A stretch of 40,584 nucleotides of DNA from Octopus bimaculoides (Eukaryota), in assembly GCF_001194135.2 (NCBI RefSeq), contig NC_068981.1, positions 43,376,374 through 43,416,957 of the forward strand. The letters run 5' to 3'. The stretch's first letter is position 1. Every line of letters begins with the position of its first letter. The position numbers were made by a program, and so were the translations under genes. The notes beneath the pieces are model-generated. The model saw only the letters and a program-made list of their open reading frames with translations, made no database searches and was not told the origin of the DNA. Of this stretch, positions 2,948 through 39,028 are shown one piece after another.

Positions 2948-5574
2948 GCTGATTTATGTAATATGATTAAACTTAGATTACTTAAAAAACAGTTTTCAGG
3001 AACTAAAATTCCTTCAAATTATTTTTATTGAAACCAATTTCAGTTGTGTGAACTGTGTGTATATTGGTGGAGAATATGCGTGTGTGAGTGTGTGTAAGCA
3101 AAAGGAATATTTGTAGTAGATTGATGTTTTGAATTATGAATAAAGTTTGAAGAATGAACTTAAAAGTACTTATGGCCTAATCTCAAATAAAATATAAAAA
3201 GGATTAAATGAAATTGCCATGTGACCTTAATTCTATAATAAGGTTGATAGAATACTGACAGATTTAATATATTCTTTTTTTTCAAAATCAAGTGATTTAA
3301 TAATCTGGAAAATTTTGCGTTGAACACTCTTATTGCTTTAGTGGTGACCCAGGGAAGATTACTAACAACTATTGTGACAAATTATGCAGGACAGTAAATT
3401 GACAGAATCATAAGAGCATTAGCCTAAAGGTCAGGTTTGCAATTTCTCCTTGTGCAGGTGTGATGCGGAGGGTGATCCATTGGCAGTAAAGAAAGATTTT
3501 AGGGTGATGCTCTGGCAGTGAGGGAGGAAGTGATGCCACGTAATGAAACAAGCTTTTGAACAATCTCTTTCTTGGATGAGAAGCCAGTGTGAACAGATGT
3601 GTGTAAGAAGTTTTGATGTATTGTAGAGTTCTGACCAAGAGGTTTGGGTTAGTGAACATATAGGGTCTCACATCAAGTTCCACTCAGATTGTAGAGTAGT
3701 TTTCGTTTTTGCAGTTGTTTCATCAATCCAAGTTAAGAGCCTTTATTTTGCCATCCTTCATACTTCGGTGGTCATTAAAATACTAGTCAAAAACTGGAAT
3801 CAGCTTAATTGTCAGTACACATGCCTAACAATCAATGTGTTGCTCTTTGACTATGTGTTACAAAATCAATATCATGGTTAGTCATATAATAAGCCATGTG
3901 AATATGTTTTTCTGTATCTGCAAGGCATCAAATAGCAAAAGAAGGGAGGGGAAAAAATAGACAAAAGAGCCAGATAGTCAGCAAGTGAGGAACAGATGGA
4001 GTGAATGCCGCTAATGTAAACAGAAGCTATGATATTCACTCATTGTTCAATTATAACATATTATCCAATAAATTTTAGTCTTTTGCATCCAATATTTTCT
4101 ACAATACAATTTCTTTCTTTTCTTTTTTTATCTTGTTAAAAAATCTTTAAATTATTTTTTAAATGATTAATGTAACAATTAGCAGAGGAATTAACAAGAA
4201 ACTAGCCTTCTGTGCAATAATTCACCATGTTATTAATACTGCAATAAACTACATGAAAACTTCTGTGTCAAGTCAAGGAGATTATCAATATAGCTGTTCA
4301 TCACTTTTTCAAACAATATCGATCACAATATGGTATTATTTAATTATTTTTGTTTGCCTTTTTTCTCATTTATAGATGTTATTTTAATATTTTATTCTTT
4401 TCTTTCTTGGCATGTCATAGTTGCATTTTCCTTTTAATGTTCTTTCTTATTTGATGCTTTTCATGTTCCCATAGTTTCTTTATGTGTTTATACATTTTTC
4501 TATTTATTTATGCAATAAAATGCAAAGAAATACCTTATAAAAAGATTTAAAAAATATTGTTTTGATGCTGTCAACATAGGATTTTAATGAATCTACAACT
4601 CCAAGGCTATTGAAAGTGTTAAAGATTGCTGTCCAAAGAAGCACAGAAAAAAAGCAAAAAAACAAAAACAACTGCTCTTTGTTCTTTGTTTCATTCAGAG
4701 GAAAAGAACAAATAGTGCTTGAATATTGCCTAAGAAATAGAGAAACATATATTGCAATTATATATATTTATTAATCATAAATATGCATAATTTTAATTGG
4801 ATACATTGGATTATGTATCCCTAGAAATCCTCTAGTAAGATGAGTTGGTCCTATCTGAAATGCTCAGTCAGTAATGACATGGAACTAGATAACAACAATG
4901 TAGGAGGAAAGGTAATTCTTGTGCTTATAATATGTATCAAGGCTTGGCAGATTGGTGGAATGAGTAAAGCAGGGGGAAAAAGAGACAAAACAATATTTAA
5001 TCATGTTTCTTAATGTTCTTCGCTCAAAATCCATTGATGTCAATTGCATTTTTCATTCTTCCAGGGTTGATAAAATAAACATCAATAAAGTATACACCCC
5101 TCCTTTGTGCTTTTGCTAGAAATCAATATTACGTGTGATGATCAATTCCTAGTGTACTTTTATAAATTGTTAAGTCACAAATATCAATGTTGAAATTGGC
5201 TGGAAAATTCTGTATAGCCACCAGTTGGATTTCATTTCCATTACATTGCCAATGCATTTGGGAAAGCCATGAATATCTAAATATTCCATTTCTTCTCTTT
5301 TGAGACTTTATTTTAAATTAACAAAGCTAGGATGGGACCAGTGTATTAATTTGTAATTTCTTGATACATGTGTTTATCCTGGCTTTTAGAATAGGTACAC
5401 CATATATCTGCTTGTTATAAGAAGCAATTAAAGTAGCTAGGATCAGAAACTGTCTCTGGTCGTAACCCATCCAAAACCTACCAGCAAGGAAAAACATATA
5501 TAAAATTTATCATATTTGCCACAGGGGTGTTTTGTGAAGGGAGCATTGCAAAGAAATATTACAACTGAGTGGAG

Positions 5575-6489
5575 AGTTACATAAAAACATTGAAGGAACA
5601 AGGAAAAGAAGAGTGGAGAAGTAAGATAAAAAGTACACATAGTATACAAGGTATGTGAATATGTGTATGAACCAGTCCTCTTGATACAGAAGAGCCTCCA
5701 ACTAGAGCTAATCGAGGAACCTACAGAGCTAAGATCATTCTAATCACTGAGGACATGGGCCTTCATCTAACTGTTGTTTTCTAATCTACAAGCATATGAT
5801 TAGAGTCACTCCATTCACTCTAACCATTTTCACCACAGCCACCCATTATCATCTCCTGCCCACCATCACTTTCCTTTCCAAGCAGGATGTGAAAATATTG
5901 ATGAAGGTTTGACTGAAGTGGAAGGTATCTGCTTTCAATTCTTTCAGTCTCATCCTTCGTACAAAGTGTGCTTACACCACTAGTTTTTATGCAACAAATA
6001 TGGATTTCCAACCACAAAGAAATAGTATTACCACAAACCAGAGAAGGTCCTAGAAAATCAGATTGTGAAACTCTTGTGGGACTTCACAATCCAAACCGAT
6101 AGAGTTTTTGAACATACAAGGTCAGACATAACTTTGGTGGTGAAAGGTACCGTAAGTAGGTGTTTGTCTGATGTATCTTGACCAGGAGATGATTACATTG
6201 ATAGTAAAGAAAACAAGAAAACTGCAAAATATGCAGACTTGAAAATAGATTTTGAGAGAATGTAGAATATAATAGGATGAGTAGTACCACTTGGGATTGG
6301 AGCACTTGGATCAGTGACGAAAAGGCTTCAGAAATACCTTGACAAAATTGGAATCCCAGCATTATAATATTACAAATGACAATCCTTTTGGGAACAATGA
6401 AAATACTTTCTATTTCAGGTTACATATTTTGATAGGGAGTCAGTTAAATGATCTAGTGTTAACAAGAAAATCATTATACAAATTAAGGT
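5575..6489 (+). mobile_element. R4/Dong-clade non-LTR retrotransposon 3' remnant 1 (restriction-like endonuclease)
   Basis: LCNKYGFPTTKK*YYHKPEKVLENQIVKLLWDFTIQTDRVFEHTRSDI...PGDDYIDSKENKKTAKYADLKIDFERM*...VVPLGIGALGSV; followed by an (AAT)n tract. Confidence 0.85.
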
Positions 6490-6516
6490 ATAATAATAAT
6501 AGTAGTAGTAGTAGTA

Positions 6517-6571
<55 letters not shown>

Positions 6572-6589
6572 TAATAATTATAATAATAA
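6490..6589. repeat. (AAT)n/(AGT)n microsatellite
   Basis: Direct reading; source of poly-N in ORF 6339..6638. Confidence 0.95.
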
Positions 6590-6810
6590 CATGAAAATTG
6601 CTAATCCAAATGCAGAAACTTTAGCACTGCTTGGATAGATTACAAGAAACTAAAACACAGTTTAGTACAGCTCCAGAAAACAGTGTTATTAGGGACAACT
6701 AGGATACTTAGGAGGGTTCTTGGCATCTAAGGTTACTTGTTGTAACCCGATGTTAGGATTCTTTTCCAGCAGTCTAATCTGTTGAGTGTATATGAAAATA
6801 ATAATAATAA
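6590..6810 (+). mobile_element. R4/Dong-like 3' remnant 2, heavily 5'-truncated
   Basis: LQKTVLLGTTRILRRVLGI* at 6671-6730, short 3' UTR, AATAATAATAATAA tail at 6797-6810. Confidence 0.75.
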
Positions 6811-7032
6811 CCTTTTCTACTACAGGCACTACAGGCACAAGGCATGAAACTTGTGAGGTGGGGGTAGTCAATTACATTGACCCCAGTGTGTAACTGACAC
6901 TTATTTCATTGACCTCGGAAGGATGAAAGTCAATGTCAATCTTGGCAGAATTTGAACTCAGAATGTAAGGACAGATGAAATTTGCTAAGCATTTTGCCTG
7001 GTGTGCTAACGATTTTACCAGCTTGCTGCCTT
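6811..7032 (-). mobile_element. SINE family B
   Basis: Reverse complement of the GGCGAGCTGGCAGAA...GAGTTCAAATTC...GTAGAAAAG family (cf. 36063-36269). Confidence 0.85.
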
Positions 7033-7078
7033 ATATAATAATAGTAATGATAATAATAATAATAGTAATAATAATAAT

Positions 7079-7525
7079 GTTTATTAATTGACATGAGTAT
7101 TCCTTGCGATCATAATATAGTGGCGAAAGAATTTGACAAGATCAGTAAATATAAAGACTTACTAATAGAAATTGAAAAAATGTGGCACCTCAAGGTGACT
7201 ACCATACCAGTGATTGTAGGATCTCTAGGAATGATAAAAAAAGGAACTGAAACCTATTTGAAAATGATACCAGGCTTACCATCCCTACAGGAAGTGCAAA
7301 AATTCATGTTAACTGGAACGATTCATGTACTGAGAAGAGCATTATCGCTGTGAAAACAACATCCATTCTTGAATTTATTTATTTATTCATTTTTTTTAAA
7401 ATACATATTTTACCTGTGAACTTGCGTGTGTTAACTGGGAATGCATACAATGAGCTTCTCTGCCTTAGGTGTATGGAAAACACTTGGCTAGAAATGGAAG
7501 AAAATTAGAAGAAAGAAGAAAAAAC

Positions 7526-7526
<1 letters not shown>
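7079..7526 (+). mobile_element. R4/Dong-like 3' remnant 3 (ORF 7093..7353 open)
   Basis: LLIDMSIPCDHNIVAKEFDKISKYKDLLIEIEKMWHLKVTTIPVIVGSLGMIKK...EVQKFMLTGTIHVLRRALSL*; flanked on both sides by (AAT)n (7037-7078 and 7527-7590). Confidence 0.9.
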
Positions 7527-7567
<41 letters not shown>

Positions 7568-7597
7568 GTAGTAATAATAATAATAATAATCAACATA

Positions 7598-8020
7598 GGC
7601 ACAGGAGTGGCTGTGTGGTAAGTAGCTTGCTTACCAACCACATGGTTCCGGGTTCAGTCCAACTGTGTGGTACCTTGGGCAAGTGTCTTCTACTATAGCC
7701 TCAGGCCGACCAAAGCCTTGTGAGTGGATTTGGTAGACAGAAACTGAAAGAAGCCCGTCGTATATATGTAAATATATATATATGTATGTGATGTGTGTGT
7801 ATATGTTTGTGTGTCTGTGTTTGTCCCCCTAGCATTGCTTGACAACCGATGCTGGTGTGTTTATGTCCCCATCACTTAGTGGTTCGGCAAAAAGAGACCG
7901 ATAGAATAAGTACTAGACTTACAAAGAATAAGTCCTGGGGTCGATTTGCTCGAATAAAGGCAGTGTTCCAGCATGGTCACAGTTGAATAACTGAAACAAG
8001 TAAAAGAGTAAAAAGAGAGT
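7598..8020 (+). mobile_element. SINE family A, near full length
   Basis: GGCACAGGAGTGGCTGTGTGGTAAG head, GGTTCAGTCC B-box-like motif, internal (AT)/(GT) tract, GTAAAAGAG tail; homologues at 9121 (-) and 38056 (+). Confidence 0.92.
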
Positions 8021-8300
8021 AACATAGCAATTTGAAATGACTATACTGTTGCGCAGAGGAAGCAAGATAGGCCTCTAAGAATATACACTGACTTAGCATA
8101 GTTGAATTAAATAGAATAAGGCAGTTAAGGTATGTATCCATCACTTCATTTGTAATTGGTGCAACTGGAATGATACATGACCAGTTCTATGAAGACATTG
8201 ACAGATTACTGTTAGAATAGATGTGGGAACGTTCAAGGAAATAGCAATACAAGGTTCTGTAAATATTATTCGGGCATTTCTCAAACAGCATTTGTCAAAC
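8021..8300 (+). mobile_element. R4/Dong-like 3' remnant 4, degraded
   Basis: YTDLA/VELNRIRQLRYVSITSFVIGATGMI.../DVGTFKEIAIQGSVNIIRAFLK, the same C-terminal motif series as remnants 1-3. Confidence 0.65.
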
Positions 8301-9120
8301 ATGAACATATTTTGTGATGTGTGTTTTCAAAGATATACTGAATGCATTTACGTATTAGAAAAGAAACTCATGCAGTATTTCTTAAATAACAACAACAGCA
8401 GTAGCAGCAGCAATAACAACAACAGCAACCACAAAAACAATCTACTGTGACATATGAATGAGAAAGGAAGGAATGATAGATGAATAAGTAAGAAAGGGTA
8501 ATGGCAAACTTGGCAGTGGGGTGATGGAAATTGTACAGTGGAAATAAAAAAATCAAACGTTTCAACTCTGTGTGAGTATATGTGTGTGTGTGTATGTAAA
8601 TGTTTGTGCTTGTGTATGTATGGGTGTGTGTGTGCAATGAAAGTGGGACGGTGAACATTCAATGCTGAAAAGAAAAATCAAACAGCGTTTCAACTCTGTG
8701 TGAGTATATGTGTGTATGTGTGTGTGTGTGTGTGCACAAGGGAAGTATGTGAATGTTTGTATCTGTGATTATTATGTACCCTATTTTGTACCTTATTTAT
8801 ATATAAAATGCTACAGTTAGCTGTCATTTTTGACAGTATGGGGCCAGCTAGTAAGAATAATAATGATGATCACAATAAATAATGATAGCAATTCGTCATG
8901 GTGGTGATTATTTCTTAGTTTAGTAGTTTAGCACAGGCCACATATTTTCAGGAGTGAAATTAATTAAAATTGAAGCCTGTACTTGACTGTTTTTTTTGGT
9001 TTTTTTTGAGATCACCAGGGTAAGGCAAAGATGAGTAGAGAAGTCAATGAGAAGGATTTTTATATTTGCTTGACAGGTTAGAAAGAGTAGTCAGAGTTTC
9101 CTTAAATGTCATCTTGCTAT

Positions 9121-9519
9121 ACTCTTTTACTCTTTTACTTGTTTCAGTTATTTGACTGCGGCCATGCTGCAACTCCGCCTTTAGTCGAGCAAATCAACCC
9201 CGGAACTTATTCTTTGTAAGCCTAGTACTTATATTATCGATCTCTTTTGCTGAACCACTAAGTGACGTGGACATAAACACACCAGCATCGGTTGTCAAGC
9301 AATGCTAGGGGGACAAACACAGACACAGAAACACACACACATATATATACATATATACGATGGGCTTCTTTCAGTTTCCGTCTACCAAATCCACTCACAA
9401 GGCCTTGGTTGGCTCGAGGCTACAGCAGAAGACACCTGCCCAAGATCCCACGCAATGGGACCAAACCCGGAACCATGTGGTTGGTAAGCAAGCTACTTAC
9501 CACGCAGCCACTCCTGCGC
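9121..9519 (-). mobile_element. SINE family A, near full length, inverted relative to 7598-8020
   Basis: Reverse complement aligns end to end with 7598-8020. Confidence 0.92.
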
Positions 9520-9594
9520 TATCTTGAAAATTGAAGAACACATTGGATAATTTTATCTAAAATAAAAAGTTAAAATTACTGGATTTTTTTTTTA

Positions 9595-9954: not shown

Positions 9955-10110
9955 CTAAATCAACAACAACAAGAACGAAAATGACAACAACAGGGATGAT
10001 GAGGATGATGATGCTAATGTTGCTGCCACCACCACCACCAGCAGCAACATGGACAATGATGATGCCAATCTTGTCACTCCCTCTGCCACCACTACTAACA
10101 ACAATAACAT
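9955..10110. repeat. Compound trinucleotide microsatellite (CAA/GAT/CCA)
   Basis: Direct reading. Confidence 0.85.
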
Positions 10111-10270: not shown

Positions 10271-10308
<38 letters not shown>

Positions 10309-10767: not shown

Positions 10768-10965
10768 ATGCATCAGCATCACCATCCACATCATCATCAT
10801 CATCATCATCACCATCATCATCCTTCTCGTGATAATCATTATCATCAACATTCATCATCAATCATCATCATTTCTATCACTACCATTACAATTTCACTAC
10901 CAATACTACCACCACCACCACCACCGCCACCACCACTGCCACTATTTTCATCACCATCACCATCT
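10768..10965. repeat. (CAT)n/(CAC)n microsatellite
   Basis: Direct reading; source of the poly-His/Pro ORFs. Confidence 0.9.
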
Positions 10966-15912: not shown

Positions 15913-16118
15913 CACGTGTCTATACATATATACATGTGTGTGTGTATGAGAAATACACAGAAGTGGGAAATAAGGCTATGTAAGTGCTATGGTACGACCG
16001 TAGTTACACTCTCGGTTCAATAATAATATGAGTGAGGAGTTTAATGTGGGTCTTGTGTTAGCATGTATATGTTAAATAAAATGAGACAACACAGCCAAGG
16101 CAGTGTGAAATTTCATTT

Positions 16119-16178
<60 letters not shown>

Positions 16179-17135
16179 NNNNNNNNNNNNNNNNNNNNNN
16201 NNNNNNNNNNNNNNNNNNNNNNNNNNNNNNNNNNNNNNNNNNNNNNNNNNNNNNNNNNNNNNNNNNNNNNNNNNNNNNNNNNNNNNNNNNNNNNNNNNNN
16301 NNNNNNNNNNNNNNNNNNNNNNNNNNNNNNNNNNNNNNNNNNNNNNNNNNNNNNNNNNNNNNNNNNNNNNNNNNNNNNNNNNNNNNNNNNNNNNNNNNNN
16401 NNNNNNNNNNNNNNNNNNNNNNNNNNNNNNNNNNNNNNNNNNNNNNNNNNNNNNNNNNNNNNNNNNNNNNNNNNNNNNNNNNNNNNNNNNNNNNNNNNNN
16501 NNNNNNNNNNNNNNNNNNNNNNNNNNNNNNNNNNNNNNNNNNNNNNNNNNNNNNNNNNNNNNNNNNNNNNNNNNNNNNNNNNNNNNNNNNNNNNNNNNNN
16601 NNNNNNNNNNNNNNNNNNNNNNNNNNNNNNNNNNNNNNNNNNNNNNNNNNNNNNNNNNNNNNNNNNNNNNNNNNNNNNNNNNNNNNNNNNNNNNNNNNNN
16701 NNNNNNNNNNNNNNNNNNNNNNNNNNNNNNNNNNNNNNNNNNNNNNNNNNNNNNNNNNNNNNNNNNNNNNNNNNNNNNNNNNNNNNNNNNNNNNNNNNNN
16801 NNNNNNNNNNNNNNNNNNNNNNNNNNNNNNNNNNNNNNNNNNNNNNNNNNNNNNNNNNNNNNNNNNNNNNNNNNNNNNNNNNNNNNNNNNNNNNNNNNNN
16901 NNNNNNNNNNNNNNNNNNNNNNNNNNNNNNNNNNNNNNNNNNNNNNNNNNNNNNNNNNNNNNNNNNNNNNNNNNNNNNNNNNNNNNNNNNNNNNNNNNNN
17001 NNNNNNNNNNNNNNNNNNNNNNNNNNNNNNNNNNNNNNNNNNNNNNNNNNNNNNNNNNNNNNNNNNNNNNNNNNNNNNNNNNNNNNNNNNNNNNNNNNNN
17101 NNNNNNNNNNNNNNNNNNNNNNNNNNNNNNNNNNN
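16179..17135. other. Assembly gap (N)
   Basis: N run; ORFs 16063..17163 and 16118..17509 are artefacts. Smaller gaps at 32801-32811 and 38959-38968. Confidence 1.
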
Positions 17136-17580
17136 GGGGGTAGAGGTAGGGGTATGTGGGTAGACAGAGGTTGGGGTGGGTGTAAGGAATTGGATGGGGT
17201 GGGGTGGGAAGGTAGAGTAGGAGTGTGTTGGGGTGGGATGAGCTTATGAGGGAGGGTTGACGATGAAGGGGAAGGTGGATATAAGAGAGGGGGAAAGCGA
17301 GGAGAAAGAGAGTGAGAGAGAGGAAGACTGAGTCTCAAAGTCATGGCTGCCACTACAGAGCCTGCGTAGACGGAGGAATTGGGAATAGGGGATGGAAAGC
17401 TCGGTGTGTTTAGGGTGGGAGGAGAAGTTAAGATAAGAGTGTGAGTCTGTGTGTTTGTAGTGGATGGAGGTGCTAAGAGTGGAGTGATGGATGCTGACGG
17501 AAATGTCAAGAAAGGGGACAGAAGTGTCAGAGATAGTGGAGGGCAGGATGGAAGGATTGAACAAAGGAGAGGAACAAGTC
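17136..17580 (-). mobile_element. Penelope-like element, RT thumb region
   Basis: PFLDISVSIHHSTLSTSIHYKHTDSHSYLNFSSHPKHTELSIPYSQFLRLRRLCS is the characteristic PLE RT C-terminal FLD...YxKxTD...SxHP...IPYSQFLRLRRxCS. Confidence 0.92.
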
Positions 17581-20790: not shown

Positions 20791-21159
20791 CTTCAGTTAC
20801 TGTCTACAAATTTCGACCACAGGATATTGGTCATCCTATCACTGTAGTATAGAACATCAACCAAAAATATTCACACAGAGGTATCAAACCCCTAATCCCT
20901 TGGTTCAAATTCAAAAGCAAACTTTGTAACCATACAGCCATACCTGTACCCCAAATATTCATTACAAATTGTATGAGTGACACATTCTTTAACTGCCATA
21001 ATATTTTAAATGCAACAGCTAGGTTGATGGAATTCTCTGGCTTTTCTCCTTACATTTGCACAAATTTATGGTCATTTGTTACTGCTATGTCAATATGCCA
21101 CATTCTCGTTTGTCATTGCTCATTATGTCTTATCTCATAGTCTCTATGTGAAAAGCATA

Positions 21160-21420: not shown

Positions 21421-22309
21421 TAACTGGTACACTTATCAGTGTAACTGACAGATAGCCAGGATGTGAAAGTTCCAAACTATTTTCAATGTCATTTTCTGAA
21501 ATAGCTGGTTGTTCATGTGAATTGCCACAAAGCATTTTTTTGTTCTTTTTGCAACAGATGAAATTTATTTATTTTCTTCTTAGTGTAGATTTATATAGAG
21601 CAACATTGCTATGTCACTGTATCTCTTAGAAATATTTTCCAGGGCTATTTGTTATAATGCAGGCATTTTTGATATTCCTTATCATATATCTAGTAGTATT
21701 ACTTACTCTTGTTAGTCCAAAGTAATCATGAACATGTATTTTCCATGATTGGCTCTTGGAAGCAAACCTCCTGTGGGACTTTATCATACATGTGCATATC
21801 TATACAATCACTTTTGATTCTCTTAGCTTCTATGTAAGCAAGCACAGTTTTTTCATAACCTATCCCTTTAATGTCTCTTTATCCTTTGTGGCAGTAACAA
21901 AGAAATTATCATCATCATTATTATTATTGTTATTGTTGTCTTTGTTGTTGTTAGCTCATTGTCTTTTAGCTTTTGTAAATATTTTTCACTGGGTTGTTAT
22001 AATTAACCCTGGGTATTGGATATGTTCAAAGAACATATAAATATGCAATTACATATGCTTTGATAAGTGTTTTGTTTGTTTGTTTATAAATGTGTGTGCA
22101 TCTTAATATGTGTGACTGTATCCAAAGATGTGTGATATGAAGAGGGTGACAGAGGCTGTTGTAAAGGTGGCTTGTTCATATTATACCGATCATTTCTTTT
22201 CTAGAATGGTTGTTGACAACATTGTTGTTGCTAATACTGCTACAGCTAATATTTCTACCATTTTTGTTTTTTTGATAGCATTCTTACTGCTATATTTTTT
22301 GCTCTTGTC

Positions 22310-22391
22310 TATGTGCATGCACACACACACCCACATATATGTGTGCATGAGTGTATATATGAATGTATATATATGTATATATACATATATA

Positions 22392-22426
<35 letters not shown>

Positions 22427-22804
22427 GCATATATAGATATGTGCATATGTATATATATATATGTATATGTGTGTATATATATATATAATATGAATATGTA
22501 TATATGTATATATATATACATACATATATGTACACGTATATGTATTCATACAAGCATGAATGTATGTGTATGTATATATTCATACATACAAGCACAAACA
22601 TATATATACATATACATACATACACACACACATATTTATGTGTATGTATATACATACATATATATATAAATATATATAGATATATATAAATGTGTATATA
22701 TATGTATATATCCATATATACACACATATATGTGTGTATGTTCATATATATATATGTGTGGGTATATGTGTGTATATGTACACTCACACACATGCACCCT
22801 CCCA

Positions 22805-22852
<48 letters not shown>

Positions 22853-22872
22853 GCATACATATATGTATATAC
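22310..22872. repeat. Large compound (AT)/(GT)/(AC) microsatellite field
   Basis: Direct reading; all I/Y/H/C-rich ORFs here are artefacts. Confidence 0.95.
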
Positions 22873-35316: not shown

Positions 35317-35733
35317 TCAGTACTGCCTGATTGGCACCTGTACCAGTGGAATGTTAGAAGCACCATTCACGTGTAATCATTGCCAGGCCCACTGACTGGT
35401 TCCCATGCCAGTGACATTGCTAGCATCACCTGATTGGCTTCTGTGCCAGTGGCACATAAAAACACCATTCGAGCATGGTCATTACCAGTGCCACCAGACT
35501 GGCTCCTGTACAGGTGGTGCATAAAAAGCACCATTTGAGCATGGCTGATGACAGTACCACCTGACTGGCCCTCGTGTTGGTGGCACGTAAAAGTACCCAC
35601 TGCACCCTCATAGTACTTGGTGTTAGGAAGGGCATCCAGCTGTAGAAACTTTGCCAGATCAGATTGGAGCCTGGTGCAGCCTTCTTGCTTGCCAGCCCTC
35701 AGTCAAACAGTCCAACCCATGCCAGCATGGAAA
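35317..35733 (+). mobile_element. SINE family C with an internal ~65-bp tandem array
   Basis: About four units of CTGACTGGCxxxxGTGCCAGTGGCACATAAAAAGCACCATTxGAGCATGG..., then the C tail. Confidence 0.85.
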
Positions 35734-37396: not shown

Positions 37397-38055
37397 GTGC
37401 ATTGTATGTGTGTGTATATACATATATATACTCAGTATATGTATGTACATTCATACACCCACATACACACACACGCATGCTGACTTAGTTCAAAGAGTAT
37501 ACGGAAAAGTTCTTTTGTAGTTGCAAGGTTCTGTGGTGCTGTACATATTAGAGAAAACAAAATTGCAGTACTTTGTCGATGGAGTAGATTCTCTCAGCTT
37601 GTGACAATGCAATTTTATGATCTACAATGCATATATTGAAGCAATTTTAAAAATTTGTAAAATGAATTATGATACTACTGCGAGACAGGAATTATTTTTA
37701 TCTAAAAATGAATTACGAAGAGAAGAATAATGTAAAATTTGTCCATATAAGCACACTTATACATAGAAACAAACACATATACAAACACAAATGTACAAAC
37801 ACACACTCATTTTTATACCAACATACAGACACATGCATGCACTAACAAACACACACATATATGCATATATATATGTATATATATGAGTAAAAAACACAAA
37901 TGGTTAAGATTGTAACTATAAAATATATGTAAATCATTTAGAAGCTGAATGTAGGACAAGGCAAAGGCAATAAATTTATAGGCTGAGGACATAGTGAGAA
38001 TATGGTCTTTCTTCCTTGTACTTGAACTTGTCTAATATACATGCATGCATACATA

Positions 38056-38215
38056 GGTGCAGGAGTGGCTGTGTGGTAAGTAGCTTGCTTATCAACCACA
38101 TGGTTCCTGGTTCGTCCCACTGTGTGGCACCTTGGGCAAGTTTTTTCTGCTATAGTCTCGGACTGACCAAAGCCTTGTGAGTGAATTTTGCAGAAAGAAA
38201 CTGAAAGAAGCCCGT

Positions 38216-38263
<48 letters not shown>

Positions 38264-38472
38264 TGTGTGTATATATGCTTGTGTGTCTGTCTTGTTCCCC
38301 CAACATTGCTTGACAACTGATGTTGGTGTGTTTATGTACCTGCAAGTATCGGTTTGGCAAAAGAGACCAATAAAGTACTAGGCTTACAAAGAATAAATCC
38401 TGGGTCGATTTGTTTGAATAAAGGCAGTGCTCCAGCATGGCTGCAGTGAAATGACTGAAGCAAACAAAAGAA
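38056..38472 (+). mobile_element. SINE family A
   Basis: Collinear with 7598-8020, with a small internal deletion. Confidence 0.9.
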
Positions 38473-39028
38473 TACATACATACAAACATACCTACTTTCA
38501 TATATACCAATCTTGAGAACTTAGGCTTTTCAAAATCAGAAAGGAGAAAGCTGATTTGAAGACTACAGATCGAATCCATCACTGGAACAGTAAAATTCTG
38601 TAAGACTTTCCAGAAGGTTATCCTTTAAGTATGTATGAGCATGTTTAGATATGCAAGTATATGCATGAGAAGACATACAAAAAACAAAAGACATACAAAT
38701 CTGCACATATACATACATACATACAAAAATAACCTGTTCTTGATGTTGAAATTCCAATGAAGGAGCCTTGGATCTAGGTTAGAAACCGACTCTTTCTCTG
38801 TTGGCAACAAATCTTGAAATAAAACTGAATAATTACAATCATGCATACATACGCACATATAGTTATACGTACATATATATACATAAATATATATGCACAC
38901 ACACATATATTGGTGCTAGGAAAAGCACTTATATATTATATATATATATATATTTTTANNNNNNNNNNGCAAAAATATTGTATCTGTTAACAAATGTAGC
39001 AAAATACTCACAAATGAGTATTTGTATT

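What the first reader, a model, noticed from the sequence alone, without database searches (positions are those of the whole stretch)
5575..8300. Four different R4/Dong-like retrotransposon ends stacked in one (TAA)n microsatellite field
Seen: four diverged restriction-like-endonuclease C-termini, all on +, within 2.7 kb. Copies 2 and 3 are flanked by (AAT)n on both sides, copy 1 is followed by it, and copy 4 sits behind (AAT)n once the intervening SINE is removed. Established: Dong (R4 clade) elements target TAA repeats. Inference: several distinct Dong lineages reused one landing pad, each insertion leaving a target for the next, and SINEs A and B also entered the same tracts.
Basis: partly seen in the sequence, partly recalled or inferred. 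Interest (0 to 1): 0.7.

Follow-up and report, generated by a model that had tools for sequence, protein, structure and literature searches.

The report
Stacked Dong-like retrotransposon remnants in TAA repeats
Four decayed, unrelated-looking tail ends of Dong-type jumping genes sit head-to-tail in one TAA microsatellite of what looks like an octopus genome; this is the ordinary, already described behaviour of that transposon family, not a new kind of element.

Summary
Window 5885-8441 holds four 5'-truncated remnants of non-LTR retrotransposons, all on the + strand. Each encodes the C-terminal restriction-like endonuclease (RLE). Each is followed after a 49-175 nt 3'UTR by a (TAA)n tract, which is degenerate after copy 4. 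Copies 2, 3 and 4 begin exactly where the previous tract ends, once SINE B and its 7-bp target duplication are removed from in front of copy 4. The copies share no DNA similarity and only 16-42% amino-acid identity, so they are independent insertions of different lineages, not a duplication. Full-length relatives have a central RT, a CCHC knuckle and a C-terminal RLE, with no AP endonuclease and no N-terminal zinc finger. The RLE model superposes on R2 structures (TM 0.78). In 11 loci fetched from other assemblies (including Octopus sinensis and Exaiptasia), 18 of 21 element 3' ends have a sense-strand (TAA)n within 300 nt and none has an antisense one. Solo copies are flanked by (TAA)n on both sides, and same-strand stacks recur. 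This matches published Dong behaviour in insects, molluscs and cnidarians. R4/Dong membership by RT phylogeny was not tested. Interest is low.

The parts
5885..6489 (+). Copy 1. A 5'-truncated, decayed Dong-like remnant: degenerate CCHC region, RLE domain, C-terminal helix in a shifted frame, and a 3'UTR of about 49 nt. It has three in-frame stops and at least one frameshift.
   Evidence: tblastn from 5885/5888 to 6355. HMM hit 5978-6361, i-E 5.5e-40. Translation. Best relatives 47-49% identical.
6490..6589 (+). Tract T1. (ATA/TAA)n of 33 units with an in-phase (TAG)6 block. It is the 3' flank of copy 1 and the 5' flank of copy 2.
   Evidence: TRF period 3, 33.3 copies, 93% matches. Sequence.
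6590..6796 (+). Copy 2. The RT motif 'AWIDYKK' fragment (6593-6649) is fused in frame to the last ~27 codons of the ORF (6647-6727). A stop and a 3'UTR of about 69 nt follow. The copy is 5'-truncated and has an internal deletion of roughly 550 codons.
   Evidence: Full-length HMM hits hmm 508-526 (i-E 0.0066) and hmm 1081-1107 (i-E 6.6e-4) in one frame. blastp/tblastn to many relatives. Peptide against the RLE HMM, E 2e-7.
6797..6810 (+). Tract T2a. (AAT)4, the left part of the tract behind copy 2, which SINE A splits.
   Evidence: Sequence. Exact tract listed.
6811..7033 (-). SINE A. A SINE copy on the minus strand, inserted inside the TAA tract.
   Evidence: 75-79% identity to four other copies in the window. 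Boundaries from alignment A3.
7034..7078 (+). Tract T2b. Imperfect (ATA)n, the right part of the split tract. It abuts the 5' end of copy 3.
   Evidence: TRF 7035-7078, period 3, 14.7 copies. Junction shown.
7079..7525 (+). Copy 3. A 5'-truncated remnant with 91 uninterrupted codons (second half of the RLE to the natural stop at 7351-7353) and a 3'UTR of about 172 nt. It is the least decayed of the four.
   Evidence: HMM hit 7075-7344, i-E 6.8e-31. 80-81% identical relatives, and 68% to Octopus sinensis LOC115230721.
7526..7591 (+). Tract T3. (ATA/TAA)n of about 22 units behind copy 3.
   Evidence: TRF 7526-7590, 96% matches.
7599..8020 (+). SINE B. It is inserted at the junction of T3 and copy 4. 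A putative 7-bp target duplication, AACATAG, lies at 7592-7598 and 8021-8027.
   Evidence: 81-85% identity to copies at 9106-9527 (minus) and 38051-38490. Alignment A2. Junctions.
8021..8384 (+). Copy 4. The most decayed remnant: the second half of the RLE spread over three reading frames with stops, then about 88 nt of presumed 3'UTR.
   Evidence: Single-frame HMM hit 8101-8220, i-E 0.013; no shuffle reaches this. Stitched peptide E 3.6e-14, hmm 100-184. 67% DNA identity to the minus-strand remnant.
8385..8441 (+). Tract T4. A degenerate trinucleotide tract (ATA/ACA/GCA/GTA units in one phase) at the position where relatives carry (TAA)n. I infer it is a mutated TAA tract.
   Evidence: TRF period 3, 17.7 copies, 76% matches. 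The distance from the ORF end (88 nt) lies within the 63-145 nt range seen in most relatives.
20945..21154 (-). A fifth RLE remnant outside the reported field, on the minus strand. It belongs to the same family as copy 4 and is cut off by a SINE-like sequence.
   Evidence: HMM i-E 5e-5 and 2.2e-4. DNA alignment to copy 4. Sequence.

Best explanation
The field is a pile-up of independent insertions of (TAA)n-specific, Dong-like non-LTR retrotransposons. These are RLE-type elements with a single ORF: an N-terminal region without an AP endonuclease, a central RT, a CCHC knuckle and a C-terminal PD-(D/E)XK restriction-like endonuclease.

Inferred mechanism, by analogy with R2-type target-primed reverse transcription:
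1. The element's protein recognises and nicks the bottom strand of a (TAA)n tract.
2. The 3' end of the element RNA (a 3'UTR, probably ending in UAA repeats read from the downstream tract) is reverse-transcribed from that nick.
3. Synthesis often stops early, which gives 5'-truncated copies.
4. The cDNA end is joined to the upstream part of the tract.

Each insertion therefore splits a tract into two tracts of the same polarity, and both remain targets. Later insertions, from any lineage with the same specificity, land next to earlier ones in the same orientation and build head-to-tail stacks.

Here at least four lineages did so, and copy 3 is the least decayed. Two SINEs, mobilised by some other LINE, later landed in or at the edge of the AT-rich tracts.

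Shown: the identity of the domains, the independence of the copies, the exact abutment of their ends to the tracts, and the family-wide strand-specific TAA association.
Inferred: the nicking specificity, the priming mechanism and the order of events.
For: Four RLE remnants lie on one strand, and shuffle controls are clean. The copies share no DNA similarity and are 16-42% identical at the amino-acid level.

Full-length relatives have RVT_1 plus zf-RVT plus a C-terminal RLE, with no Exo_endo_phos and no N-terminal zinc finger. Their best matches among solved structures are R2 proteins. An AlphaFold model of the closest relative of copy 1 (pLDDT 96) superposes on the R2Tg, R2Pm and R2Bm C-terminal modules with TM 0.69-0.78.

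Every copy's 3'UTR runs into a TAA-type tract, and copies 2-4 begin at the end of the preceding tract.

Outside loci:
- 18 of 21 element 3' ends have sense (TAA)n within 300 nt, 15 of them at 60-200 nt, against a 2.7% background. My binomial arithmetic gives about 1e-19; this is indicative only, because the loci are not independent.
- No antisense tract lies downstream of any 3' end, and tracts are 52 sense to 3 antisense overall.
- Solo copies are flanked on both sides by (TAA)n.
- Same-strand stacks recur in L003, L004, L010 and L011.

Literature:
- Dong elements target TAA microsatellites in Bombyx, Anopheles and the snail Biomphalaria (PMC3812793).
- The Octopus bimaculoides repeat library holds a full-length Dong (PMC9115989).
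- Octopus vulgaris transcripts are masked as LINE/Dong-R4.
Against: - No RT phylogeny with named Dong/R4/Rex6/HERO references was possible, so the clade name is not proven.
- Copy 1 has no (TAA)n at its undetermined 5' end.
- Copy 4's downstream tract is (AAC/AGC/ATA)n, not clean (TAA)n.
- Three of 21 outside 3' ends (two in L001, one in L011) lack a nearby tract, so specificity is not absolute or tracts decay.
- The outside loci were chosen by protein homology and number only 11, from a handful of assemblies. This is not the genome-wide test in the host.
- Endonuclease specificity and priming are inferred, not shown.
Confidence: 0.85

Rival explanations
1. The elements belong to another RLE clade, for example HERO, some of whose families are reported to be microsatellite-specific, or to an unnamed sister lineage that acquired TAA specificity independently. 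The biology at this locus would be the same, but the name 'Dong/R4' would be wrong.
For: [quoted passage not shown] No named Dong, R4 or Rex6 reference was recovered in the protein searches. The family profile hits 23,710 cluster representatives at E <= 0.001, so it probably spans more than one clade.
Against: (TAA)n with fixed polarity is the specific published hallmark of Dong in insects, molluscs and cnidarians. The lack of N-terminal zinc fingers matches the R4/Dong description. Octopus repeat libraries and RepeatMasker already label such sequences Dong-R4. Close full-length relatives occur in Lepidoptera and in Exaiptasia, hosts listed for R4/Dong-like elements.
Confidence: 0.1
2. The (TAA)n tracts are only tails carried by each element, as poly(A) is for L1. 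Insertion would then be essentially untargeted, and the cluster would reflect chance, a regional hot spot or AT-richness.
For: Every tract here lies directly behind an element's 3'UTR. Copy 1 has no tract on its 5' side. Many LINE families carry microsatellite-like tails (general knowledge; PMC3812793).
Against: Three successive 5'-truncated copies, each truncated at a different point, start exactly at the end of the preceding tract. Solo truncated copies in other genomes have (TAA)n on both sides with no upstream element to supply it (L002, L008). Four of the window's five remnants lie within 2.6 kb and all four share one orientation. Untargeted insertion would not give this.
Confidence: 0.04
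3. The block is one element, or one element-plus-tract unit, that was tandemly duplicated or amplified by unequal crossing-over within the microsatellite and then diverged.
For: The units share one orientation and alternate regularly between element and tract.
Against: blastn at word size 7 finds no significant similarity between any two units. The 5' truncation points and 3'UTR lengths (49, 69, 172 and 88 nt) differ. Protein identity between units (16-42%) is lower than identity of copy 3 to elements of other species (59-81%).
Confidence: 0.01

Closest known systems
Dong elements (R4 clade): Dong of Bombyx mori, DongAg of Anopheles gambiae, DongBg of Biomphalaria glabrata, and Dong of Darwinula stevensoni
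   Same: They have a single ORF with an RT and a C-terminal restriction-like endonuclease, no AP endonuclease and no N-terminal zinc fingers. They insert into (TAA)n microsatellites. They occur in molluscs and cnidarians. Relatives of the window copies show all of these features.
   Different: Membership by RT phylogeny was not tested. Only C-terminal remnants are present in the window. At least three or four mutually very divergent lineages (16-42% amino-acid identity) share one tract, and I did not find that described in the papers I could read.
R2 elements (R2Bm, R2Tg; solved TPRT complexes 8gh6, 9dou, 9nl3)
   Same: They show the same overall architecture and the same fold of the CCHC knuckle plus RLE module (Foldseek TM 0.69-0.78). 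They are the best RT matches among solved structures (E 4.5e-32). They supply the TPRT mechanism taken here as the model.
   Different: R2 targets a single site in 28S rDNA and has N-terminal zinc-finger and Myb domains. No rRNA is present in the window, no N-terminal zinc-finger or Myb domain is found in relatives, and identity in the RLE module is only 12-19%.
Other microsatellite-specific LINEs: Kibi (TC)n and Koshi (TTC)n of fishes, Togen (TG)n, Waldo (ACAY)n and Mino (AC)n
   Same: They share the strategy of using a simple repeat as a multicopy, harmless target.
   Different: They use different repeat units. Several of them (Waldo, Mino) are AP-endonuclease elements of the R1 clade, and Togen is near NeSL/HERO.
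HERO clade
   Same: It is an RLE-type clade, and some families are reported as microsatellite-specific.
   Different: It is mostly non-specific. No evidence obtained here ties the window copies to HERO, and I could not test this directly.

Membership tests
RLE-type non-LTR retrotransposons (R2 group sensu Repbase) | A single polyprotein with a central reverse transcriptase | tested here: met
   In sixteen full-length relatives (1045-1304 aa), RVT_1 lies in the middle of the protein, starting between about aa 380 and 640, with E 1e-21 to 1e-31. Copy 2 retains the RT motif 'AWIDYKK'.
RLE-type non-LTR retrotransposons (R2 group sensu Repbase) | A C-terminal CCHC knuckle followed by a PD-(D/E)XK restriction-like endonuclease | tested here: met
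   The motifs C-x2-C...H-x4-C, RHD, RPD, D-[IV]-A-V-P and K-E-x-E-K appear in alignments A1 and A4. zf-RVT hits are. The AlphaFold model (pLDDT 96) matches the C-terminal module of R2 structures with TM 0.78 and E 4e-11.
RLE-type non-LTR retrotransposons (R2 group sensu Repbase) | No N-terminal apurinic/apyrimidinic (APE) endonuclease | tested here: met
   No Exo_endo_phos hit appears in 16 full-length relatives, even at E <= 5.
R4/Dong clade | Dong-type target: insertion into (TAA)n with the element's sense strand on the TAA strand | tested here: met
   In the window, copies 1-3 run into (TAA)n and copies 2-4 start at a tract end. Outside the window, 18 of 21 element 3' ends have a sense tract, none has an antisense tract, and solo copies are flanked on both sides.
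R4/Dong clade | No N-terminal zinc fingers; only a highly diverged Myb/SANT-like domain (PMC7998251) | tested here: inconclusive
   Pfam finds no zinc finger or Myb upstream of the RT in 16 relatives, which agrees with the description. The diverged Myb-like domain itself was detected in the paper only by HHpred and was not detected here.
R4/Dong clade | The RT domain groups with Dong, R4 and Rex6 references in a phylogeny | not testable with these tools
   No named reference sequences could be obtained. The founding papers are not held. The Dong-annotated octopus transcripts are listed, but their sequences are not held.
R2 clade | Site-specific insertion in 28S rDNA; N-terminal zinc-finger and Myb domains | tested here: not met
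   No Rfam family (rRNA or other) matches in the window. The flanks are TAA microsatellite. No N-terminal zinc finger or Myb is found in relatives.
HERO clade | The RT domain groups with HERO references | not testable with these tools
   No HERO reference sequences are available. Only the literature statement that some HERO families are microsatellite-specific could be used.

The most novel reading that the evidence does not exclude
TAA microsatellite fields act as self-renewing, shared safe-harbour landing pads. Every insertion splits a tract into two same-polarity targets, and may lengthen it through the element's own UAA-tailed RNA. Several anciently diverged Dong lineages could then coexist in one genome by using the same pads, and head-to-tail multi-lineage stacks would be conserved genome architecture from cnidarians to cephalopods. 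In this reading the elements would be a main generator of (TAA)n tracts in these genomes, and AT-seeking SINEs would secondarily exploit the same pads.
Probability: 0.3. Interest if true: 0.4.

Novelty: new member of a known kind. Interest (0 to 1): 0.2.

Why it matters
The main use is for annotation. Four short, stop-riddled fragments and their tracts can be labelled as Dong-like (TAA)n-specific LINE remnants with two nested SINEs. The locus needs no gene or regulatory explanation.

It also gives a compact, readable example of how a microsatellite-specific retrotransposon turns one tract into an oriented stack, and of several very divergent lineages sharing one target. If quantified genome-wide, such stacks could show how much of a cephalopod's TAA microsatellite content is made or maintained by these elements. 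They could also show how target-specific LINE lineages coexist.

None of this would surprise a transposon specialist.

Tried and rejected
- Pfam on the four peptides found nothing; there is no Pfam model for this RLE.
- Names from protein databases were only generic, such as 'uncharacterized protein' or 'reverse transcriptase'. A reference-based clade assignment therefore failed.
- Supplements of the octopus LINE paper list transcripts masked as LINE/Dong-R4 (R4-1_AC, Dong, R4-1_BM), but the sequences of those transcripts are not in the stored part.
- Xiong & Eickbush 1993 and Biedler et al. 2015 are not held.
- The first structure prediction, from a 17-sequence alignment, was poor (pLDDT 53). 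I did not use it. A 55-sequence alignment gave pLDDT 96.
- Tandem duplication of one unit is rejected because the units share no DNA similarity.
- An rDNA, snRNA or tRNA target is rejected. ARAGORN and Rfam find nothing in the window.
- I tested whether the other clean (AAT)11 tract at 10271-10305 also carries an element. No RLE or RT signal is present, and the four 3'UTRs have no DNA similarity to it. A fragment consisting only of 3'UTR from an unknown family cannot be excluded.
- A fixed phase at the 3' junction is not decidable, because the 3'UTRs end in A/T-rich bases.
- I considered 5'-truncation hot spots. Copies 3 and 4 and L010-C all start near the 'LIDxxVP' motif, and copy 2 and L011-B both start near RT motif A. 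The junction sequences differ and the sample is too small, so I dropped the idea.
Full report
**What is in the sequence**

Translating 5400-8400 in the three forward frames shows four peptides of the type ...LWDFxIQTD...RPD...IDxAVPxDxN...KExEKxxKYxDL...VxGALG...LLGTAxILRxVL. I built a profile from database relatives and searched it against the six-frame translation of the whole 40,584-base window. It hits only five places:

| Copy | Coordinates | Strand | i-E |
|---|---|---|---|
| 1 | 5978-6361 | + | 5.5e-40 |
| 2 | 6644-6721 | + | 1.1e-3 |
| 3 | 7075-7344 | + | 6.8e-31 |
| 4 | 8101-8220 | + | 0.013 |
| 5 | 21142-20945 | - | 5e-5 |

- **Controls.** None of 30 block-shuffled windows, nor the reversed window, gives a hit as good as the weakest of these. 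The best control hit is 0.037.
- **Copy 4.** With its three frames stitched (my choice of frames), it scores E 3.6e-14 over profile positions 100-184. It also aligns at the DNA level (67% over 135 bp) with the minus-strand remnant.
- **Copy 2.** A full-length profile shows it has two parts in one frame. The first part is the RT motif around 'AWIDYKK' (6593-6649, profile 508-526). The second is the last 27 codons of the ORF (6647-6727, profile 1081-1107). The copy is therefore 5'-truncated and internally deleted.
- **Copy 3.** It has 91 uninterrupted codons up to the natural stop.
- **Copies 1 and 4.** Both carry stops and frameshifts.

**Layout of the field**

Tandem Repeats Finder and the sequence itself give the order below. 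The SINEs were delimited against other copies in the window.

| Feature | Coordinates | Note |
|---|---|---|
| copy 1 | about 5885-6489 | |
| (ATA)33 | 6490-6589 | contains a (TAG)6 block |
| copy 2 | 6590-6796 | |
| (AAT)4 | 6797-6810 | |
| SINE A | 6811-7033 | minus strand |
| imperfect (ATA)n | 7034-7078 | |
| copy 3 | 7079-7525 | |
| (ATA)22 | 7526-7591 | |
| SINE B | about 7599-8020 | plus strand |
| copy 4 | 8021-8384 | |
| degenerate trinucleotide tract | 8385-8441 | |

SINE B is bracketed by AACATAG at 7592-7598 and 8021-8027. The other two SINE B copies also appear to show short flank duplications. Removing SINE B and one copy of the duplication puts the 5' end of copy 4 directly behind the tract. 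Each copy's ORF end is followed by a tract after 49, 69, 175 and 88 nt respectively.

- Copy 1 is detectable only from about 5885.
- Copy 1's 5' flank is not TAA.
- The tract behind copy 4 is not clean TAA.
- The feature extends to 8441.

**The copies are independent insertions**

- blastn at word size 7 finds no significant similarity between any two copies or their 3'UTRs.
- On profile-aligned columns, amino-acid identity is 35% (copies 1 and 3), 16% (1 and 4), 19% (3 and 4), and 41-42% for the short copy 2 against copies 1 and 3.
- Copy 3 is 80-81% identical to proteins from other assemblies, 68% to Octopus sinensis LOC115230721 and 59% to an Exaiptasia element. That is closer than it is to its neighbours.
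- Their 5' truncation points and 3'UTR lengths all differ.

A tandem duplication is excluded.

**What kind of element this is**

A profile search of 1.84 billion cluster representatives finds 23,710 relatives at E <= 0.001. Many are 1,000-1,300 aa long with the domain at the extreme C-terminus.

- **Domain architecture.** Sixteen full-length relatives have RVT_1 in the middle and a weak zf-RVT (CCHC) hit before the C-terminal domain. They have no Exo_endo_phos domain and no recognisable N-terminal zinc finger or Myb.
- **Solved structures by sequence.** The best matches are R2 retrotransposon proteins (E 4.5e-32), ahead of L1 ORF2p.
- **Solved structures by fold.** An AlphaFold model of the closest relative of copy 1 (pLDDT 96) superposes on the C-terminal zinc-knuckle plus RLE module of R2Tg, R2Pm and R2Bm. 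TM is 0.69-0.78 and E goes down to 4e-11. More distant hits are viral cap-snatching endonucleases, which share the PD-(D/E)XK fold.

These are RLE-type non-LTR retrotransposons of the R2 group, but not R2 itself. Rfam finds no rRNA or other RNA gene in the window.

**Target preference tested on related loci**

The host genome is not available, so I fetched 11 loci encoding relatives (72 kb). They include Octopus sinensis (L009), Exaiptasia (L008) and several ENA and Logan assemblies.

- **3' ends.** Of 21 element 3' ends, 18 have a sense-strand (TAA)>=3 within 300 nt, 15 of them at 60-200 nt. None has an antisense tract.
- **Tract polarity.** Tracts relative to the fetched element's strand number 52 sense and 3 antisense. 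Two of the three antisense tracts flank a minus-strand element and are sense for that element.
- **Background.** The frequency of a tract start 60-200 nt downstream of a random strand-specific position in the first eight loci plus the window is 2.7%. Fifteen of 21 corresponds to a binomial probability near 1e-19. That is my arithmetic and is indicative only, because the loci are few and not independent.
- **Solo copies.** Solo 5'-truncated copies have (TAA)n immediately on both sides. Examples are L002 (tract ends 5835, homology starts 5836), L008 (3977/3979) and the minus-strand copy of L001.
- **Stacks.** Head-to-tail stacks of three or four elements in one orientation, separated by (TAA)n, occur in L003, L004, L010 and L011.

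The window's architecture is the usual one for this family.

**Comparison with the literature**

- Dong elements of Bombyx, Anopheles and the snail Biomphalaria target TAA microsatellites (Kojima & Fujiwara 2004 and Xiong & Eickbush 1993, as summarised in PMC3812793).
- Schön et al. [quoted passage not shown] They also state that R4/Dong elements have RT and REL-endonuclease domains, lack N-terminal zinc fingers, and have only a highly diverged Myb-like domain (PMC7998251).
- Petrosino et al. 2022 found a full-length Dong in the Octopus bimaculoides repeat library (PMC9115989). Their RepeatMasker table labels O. vulgaris transcripts as LINE/Dong-R4.
- Kojima & Jurka 2015 note that some HERO families are also microsatellite-specific (PMC4640811). 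HERO therefore remains a naming rival that I could not test, because no reference sequences could be obtained.

**How it most likely works**

Shown:
- the identity of the domains;
- the independence and common orientation of the copies;
- their exact abutment to the tracts;
- the strand-specific TAA association across hosts.

Inferred from the R2 paradigm and from other target-specific LINEs:
- The protein nicks the (TTA)n strand of a tract.
- Reverse transcription is primed there on the 3' end of the element RNA, probably helped by pairing of read-through UAA repeats.
- Synthesis often aborts, giving 5' truncation.
- The cDNA is joined to the upstream part of the tract.

An insertion thus converts one tract into two of the same polarity, and these remain targets for any lineage with the same specificity. 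That explains both the stacks and the uniform orientation. SINE A (inside a tract) and SINE B (at a tract edge) are later arrivals. Other copies of these SINEs in the window are not in TAA tracts, so their presence here probably reflects an AT-rich target preference of their own LINE partner. That last point is inference.

**Verdict**

The locus is a new instance, with several divergent lineages, of a known kind of element behaving as published. It is not surprising to a specialist. The only modestly interesting aspect is that very divergent lineages share one pad and that such stacks recur from cnidarians to cephalopods. Both points could be quantified genome-wide.

Noticed in passing
window 20945-21154 (minus strand), with 21905-21950: A fifth RLE remnant of the same family as copy 4 (67% DNA identity) lies 13 kb away on the opposite strand. 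It is cut off on its 3' side by a SINE-like sequence. A mixed (AAC)/(AAT)/(GAT) tract lies upstream on its sense strand, but continuity between that tract and the remnant could not be shown.
   Followed up: partly
window 6593-6727: Copy 2 joins the RT motif 'AWIDYKK' in frame to the last 27 codons of the ORF, an internal deletion of roughly 550 codons. I did not examine whether this is a one-off deletion or a non-autonomous deletion-derivative family.
   Followed up: partly
L003 1-9387; L004 1-8886; L010 1-5321; L011 1-5330: Other assemblies hold same-orientation stacks of three or four Dong-like elements separated by (TAA)n. They include full-length copies whose 5'UTR starts directly after the previous element's tract.
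   Followed up: yes
L001 1-687 and 1007-3666 (+ strand): Two stacked relatives of copy 3 have no (TAA)n after their 3' ends, while a minus-strand copy in the same locus is flanked by (TAA)n on both sides. This may be a sub-lineage with a lost or changed target, or the tracts may have decayed.
   Followed up: no
window 7592-7598 / 8021-8027; also around 9106-9527 and 38051-38490: SINE B copies appear to carry short target-site duplications of 6-8 bp (AACATAG here). This allows the empty site to be reconstructed.
   Followed up: partly
window 10271-10305: A clean (AAT)11 tract preceded by poly(A) has no recognisable RLE or RT remnant next to it. Trinucleotide-rich, coding-like repeats (GAT, CCA, CAT, ACC) lie around 9960-10100 and 10771-10964.
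   Followed up: partly
window 22354-22871: A very long imperfect (TA)n tract of about 518 bp.
   Followed up: no
window 35427-35592: A 66-bp tandem repeat with 2.2-2.5 copies at 76-79% identity.
   Followed up: no
window 16063-17509: Two long overlapping ORFs lie on opposite strands (366 aa on +, 463 aa on -) and have no Pfam match. They begin next to (CA)n/(AT)n tracts at 16119-16178. They may be an artefact of low-complexity sequence or an unrecognised element.
   Followed up: partly
P0181 aa 1016-1080; model m535c329892c3: The RLE domain gives a weak Pfam hit to L_protein_N and Foldseek hits to bunyavirus and arenavirus cap-snatching endonucleases (TM about 0.3-0.45). This reflects the shared PD-(D/E)XK fold and no closer relationship.
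   Followed up: no
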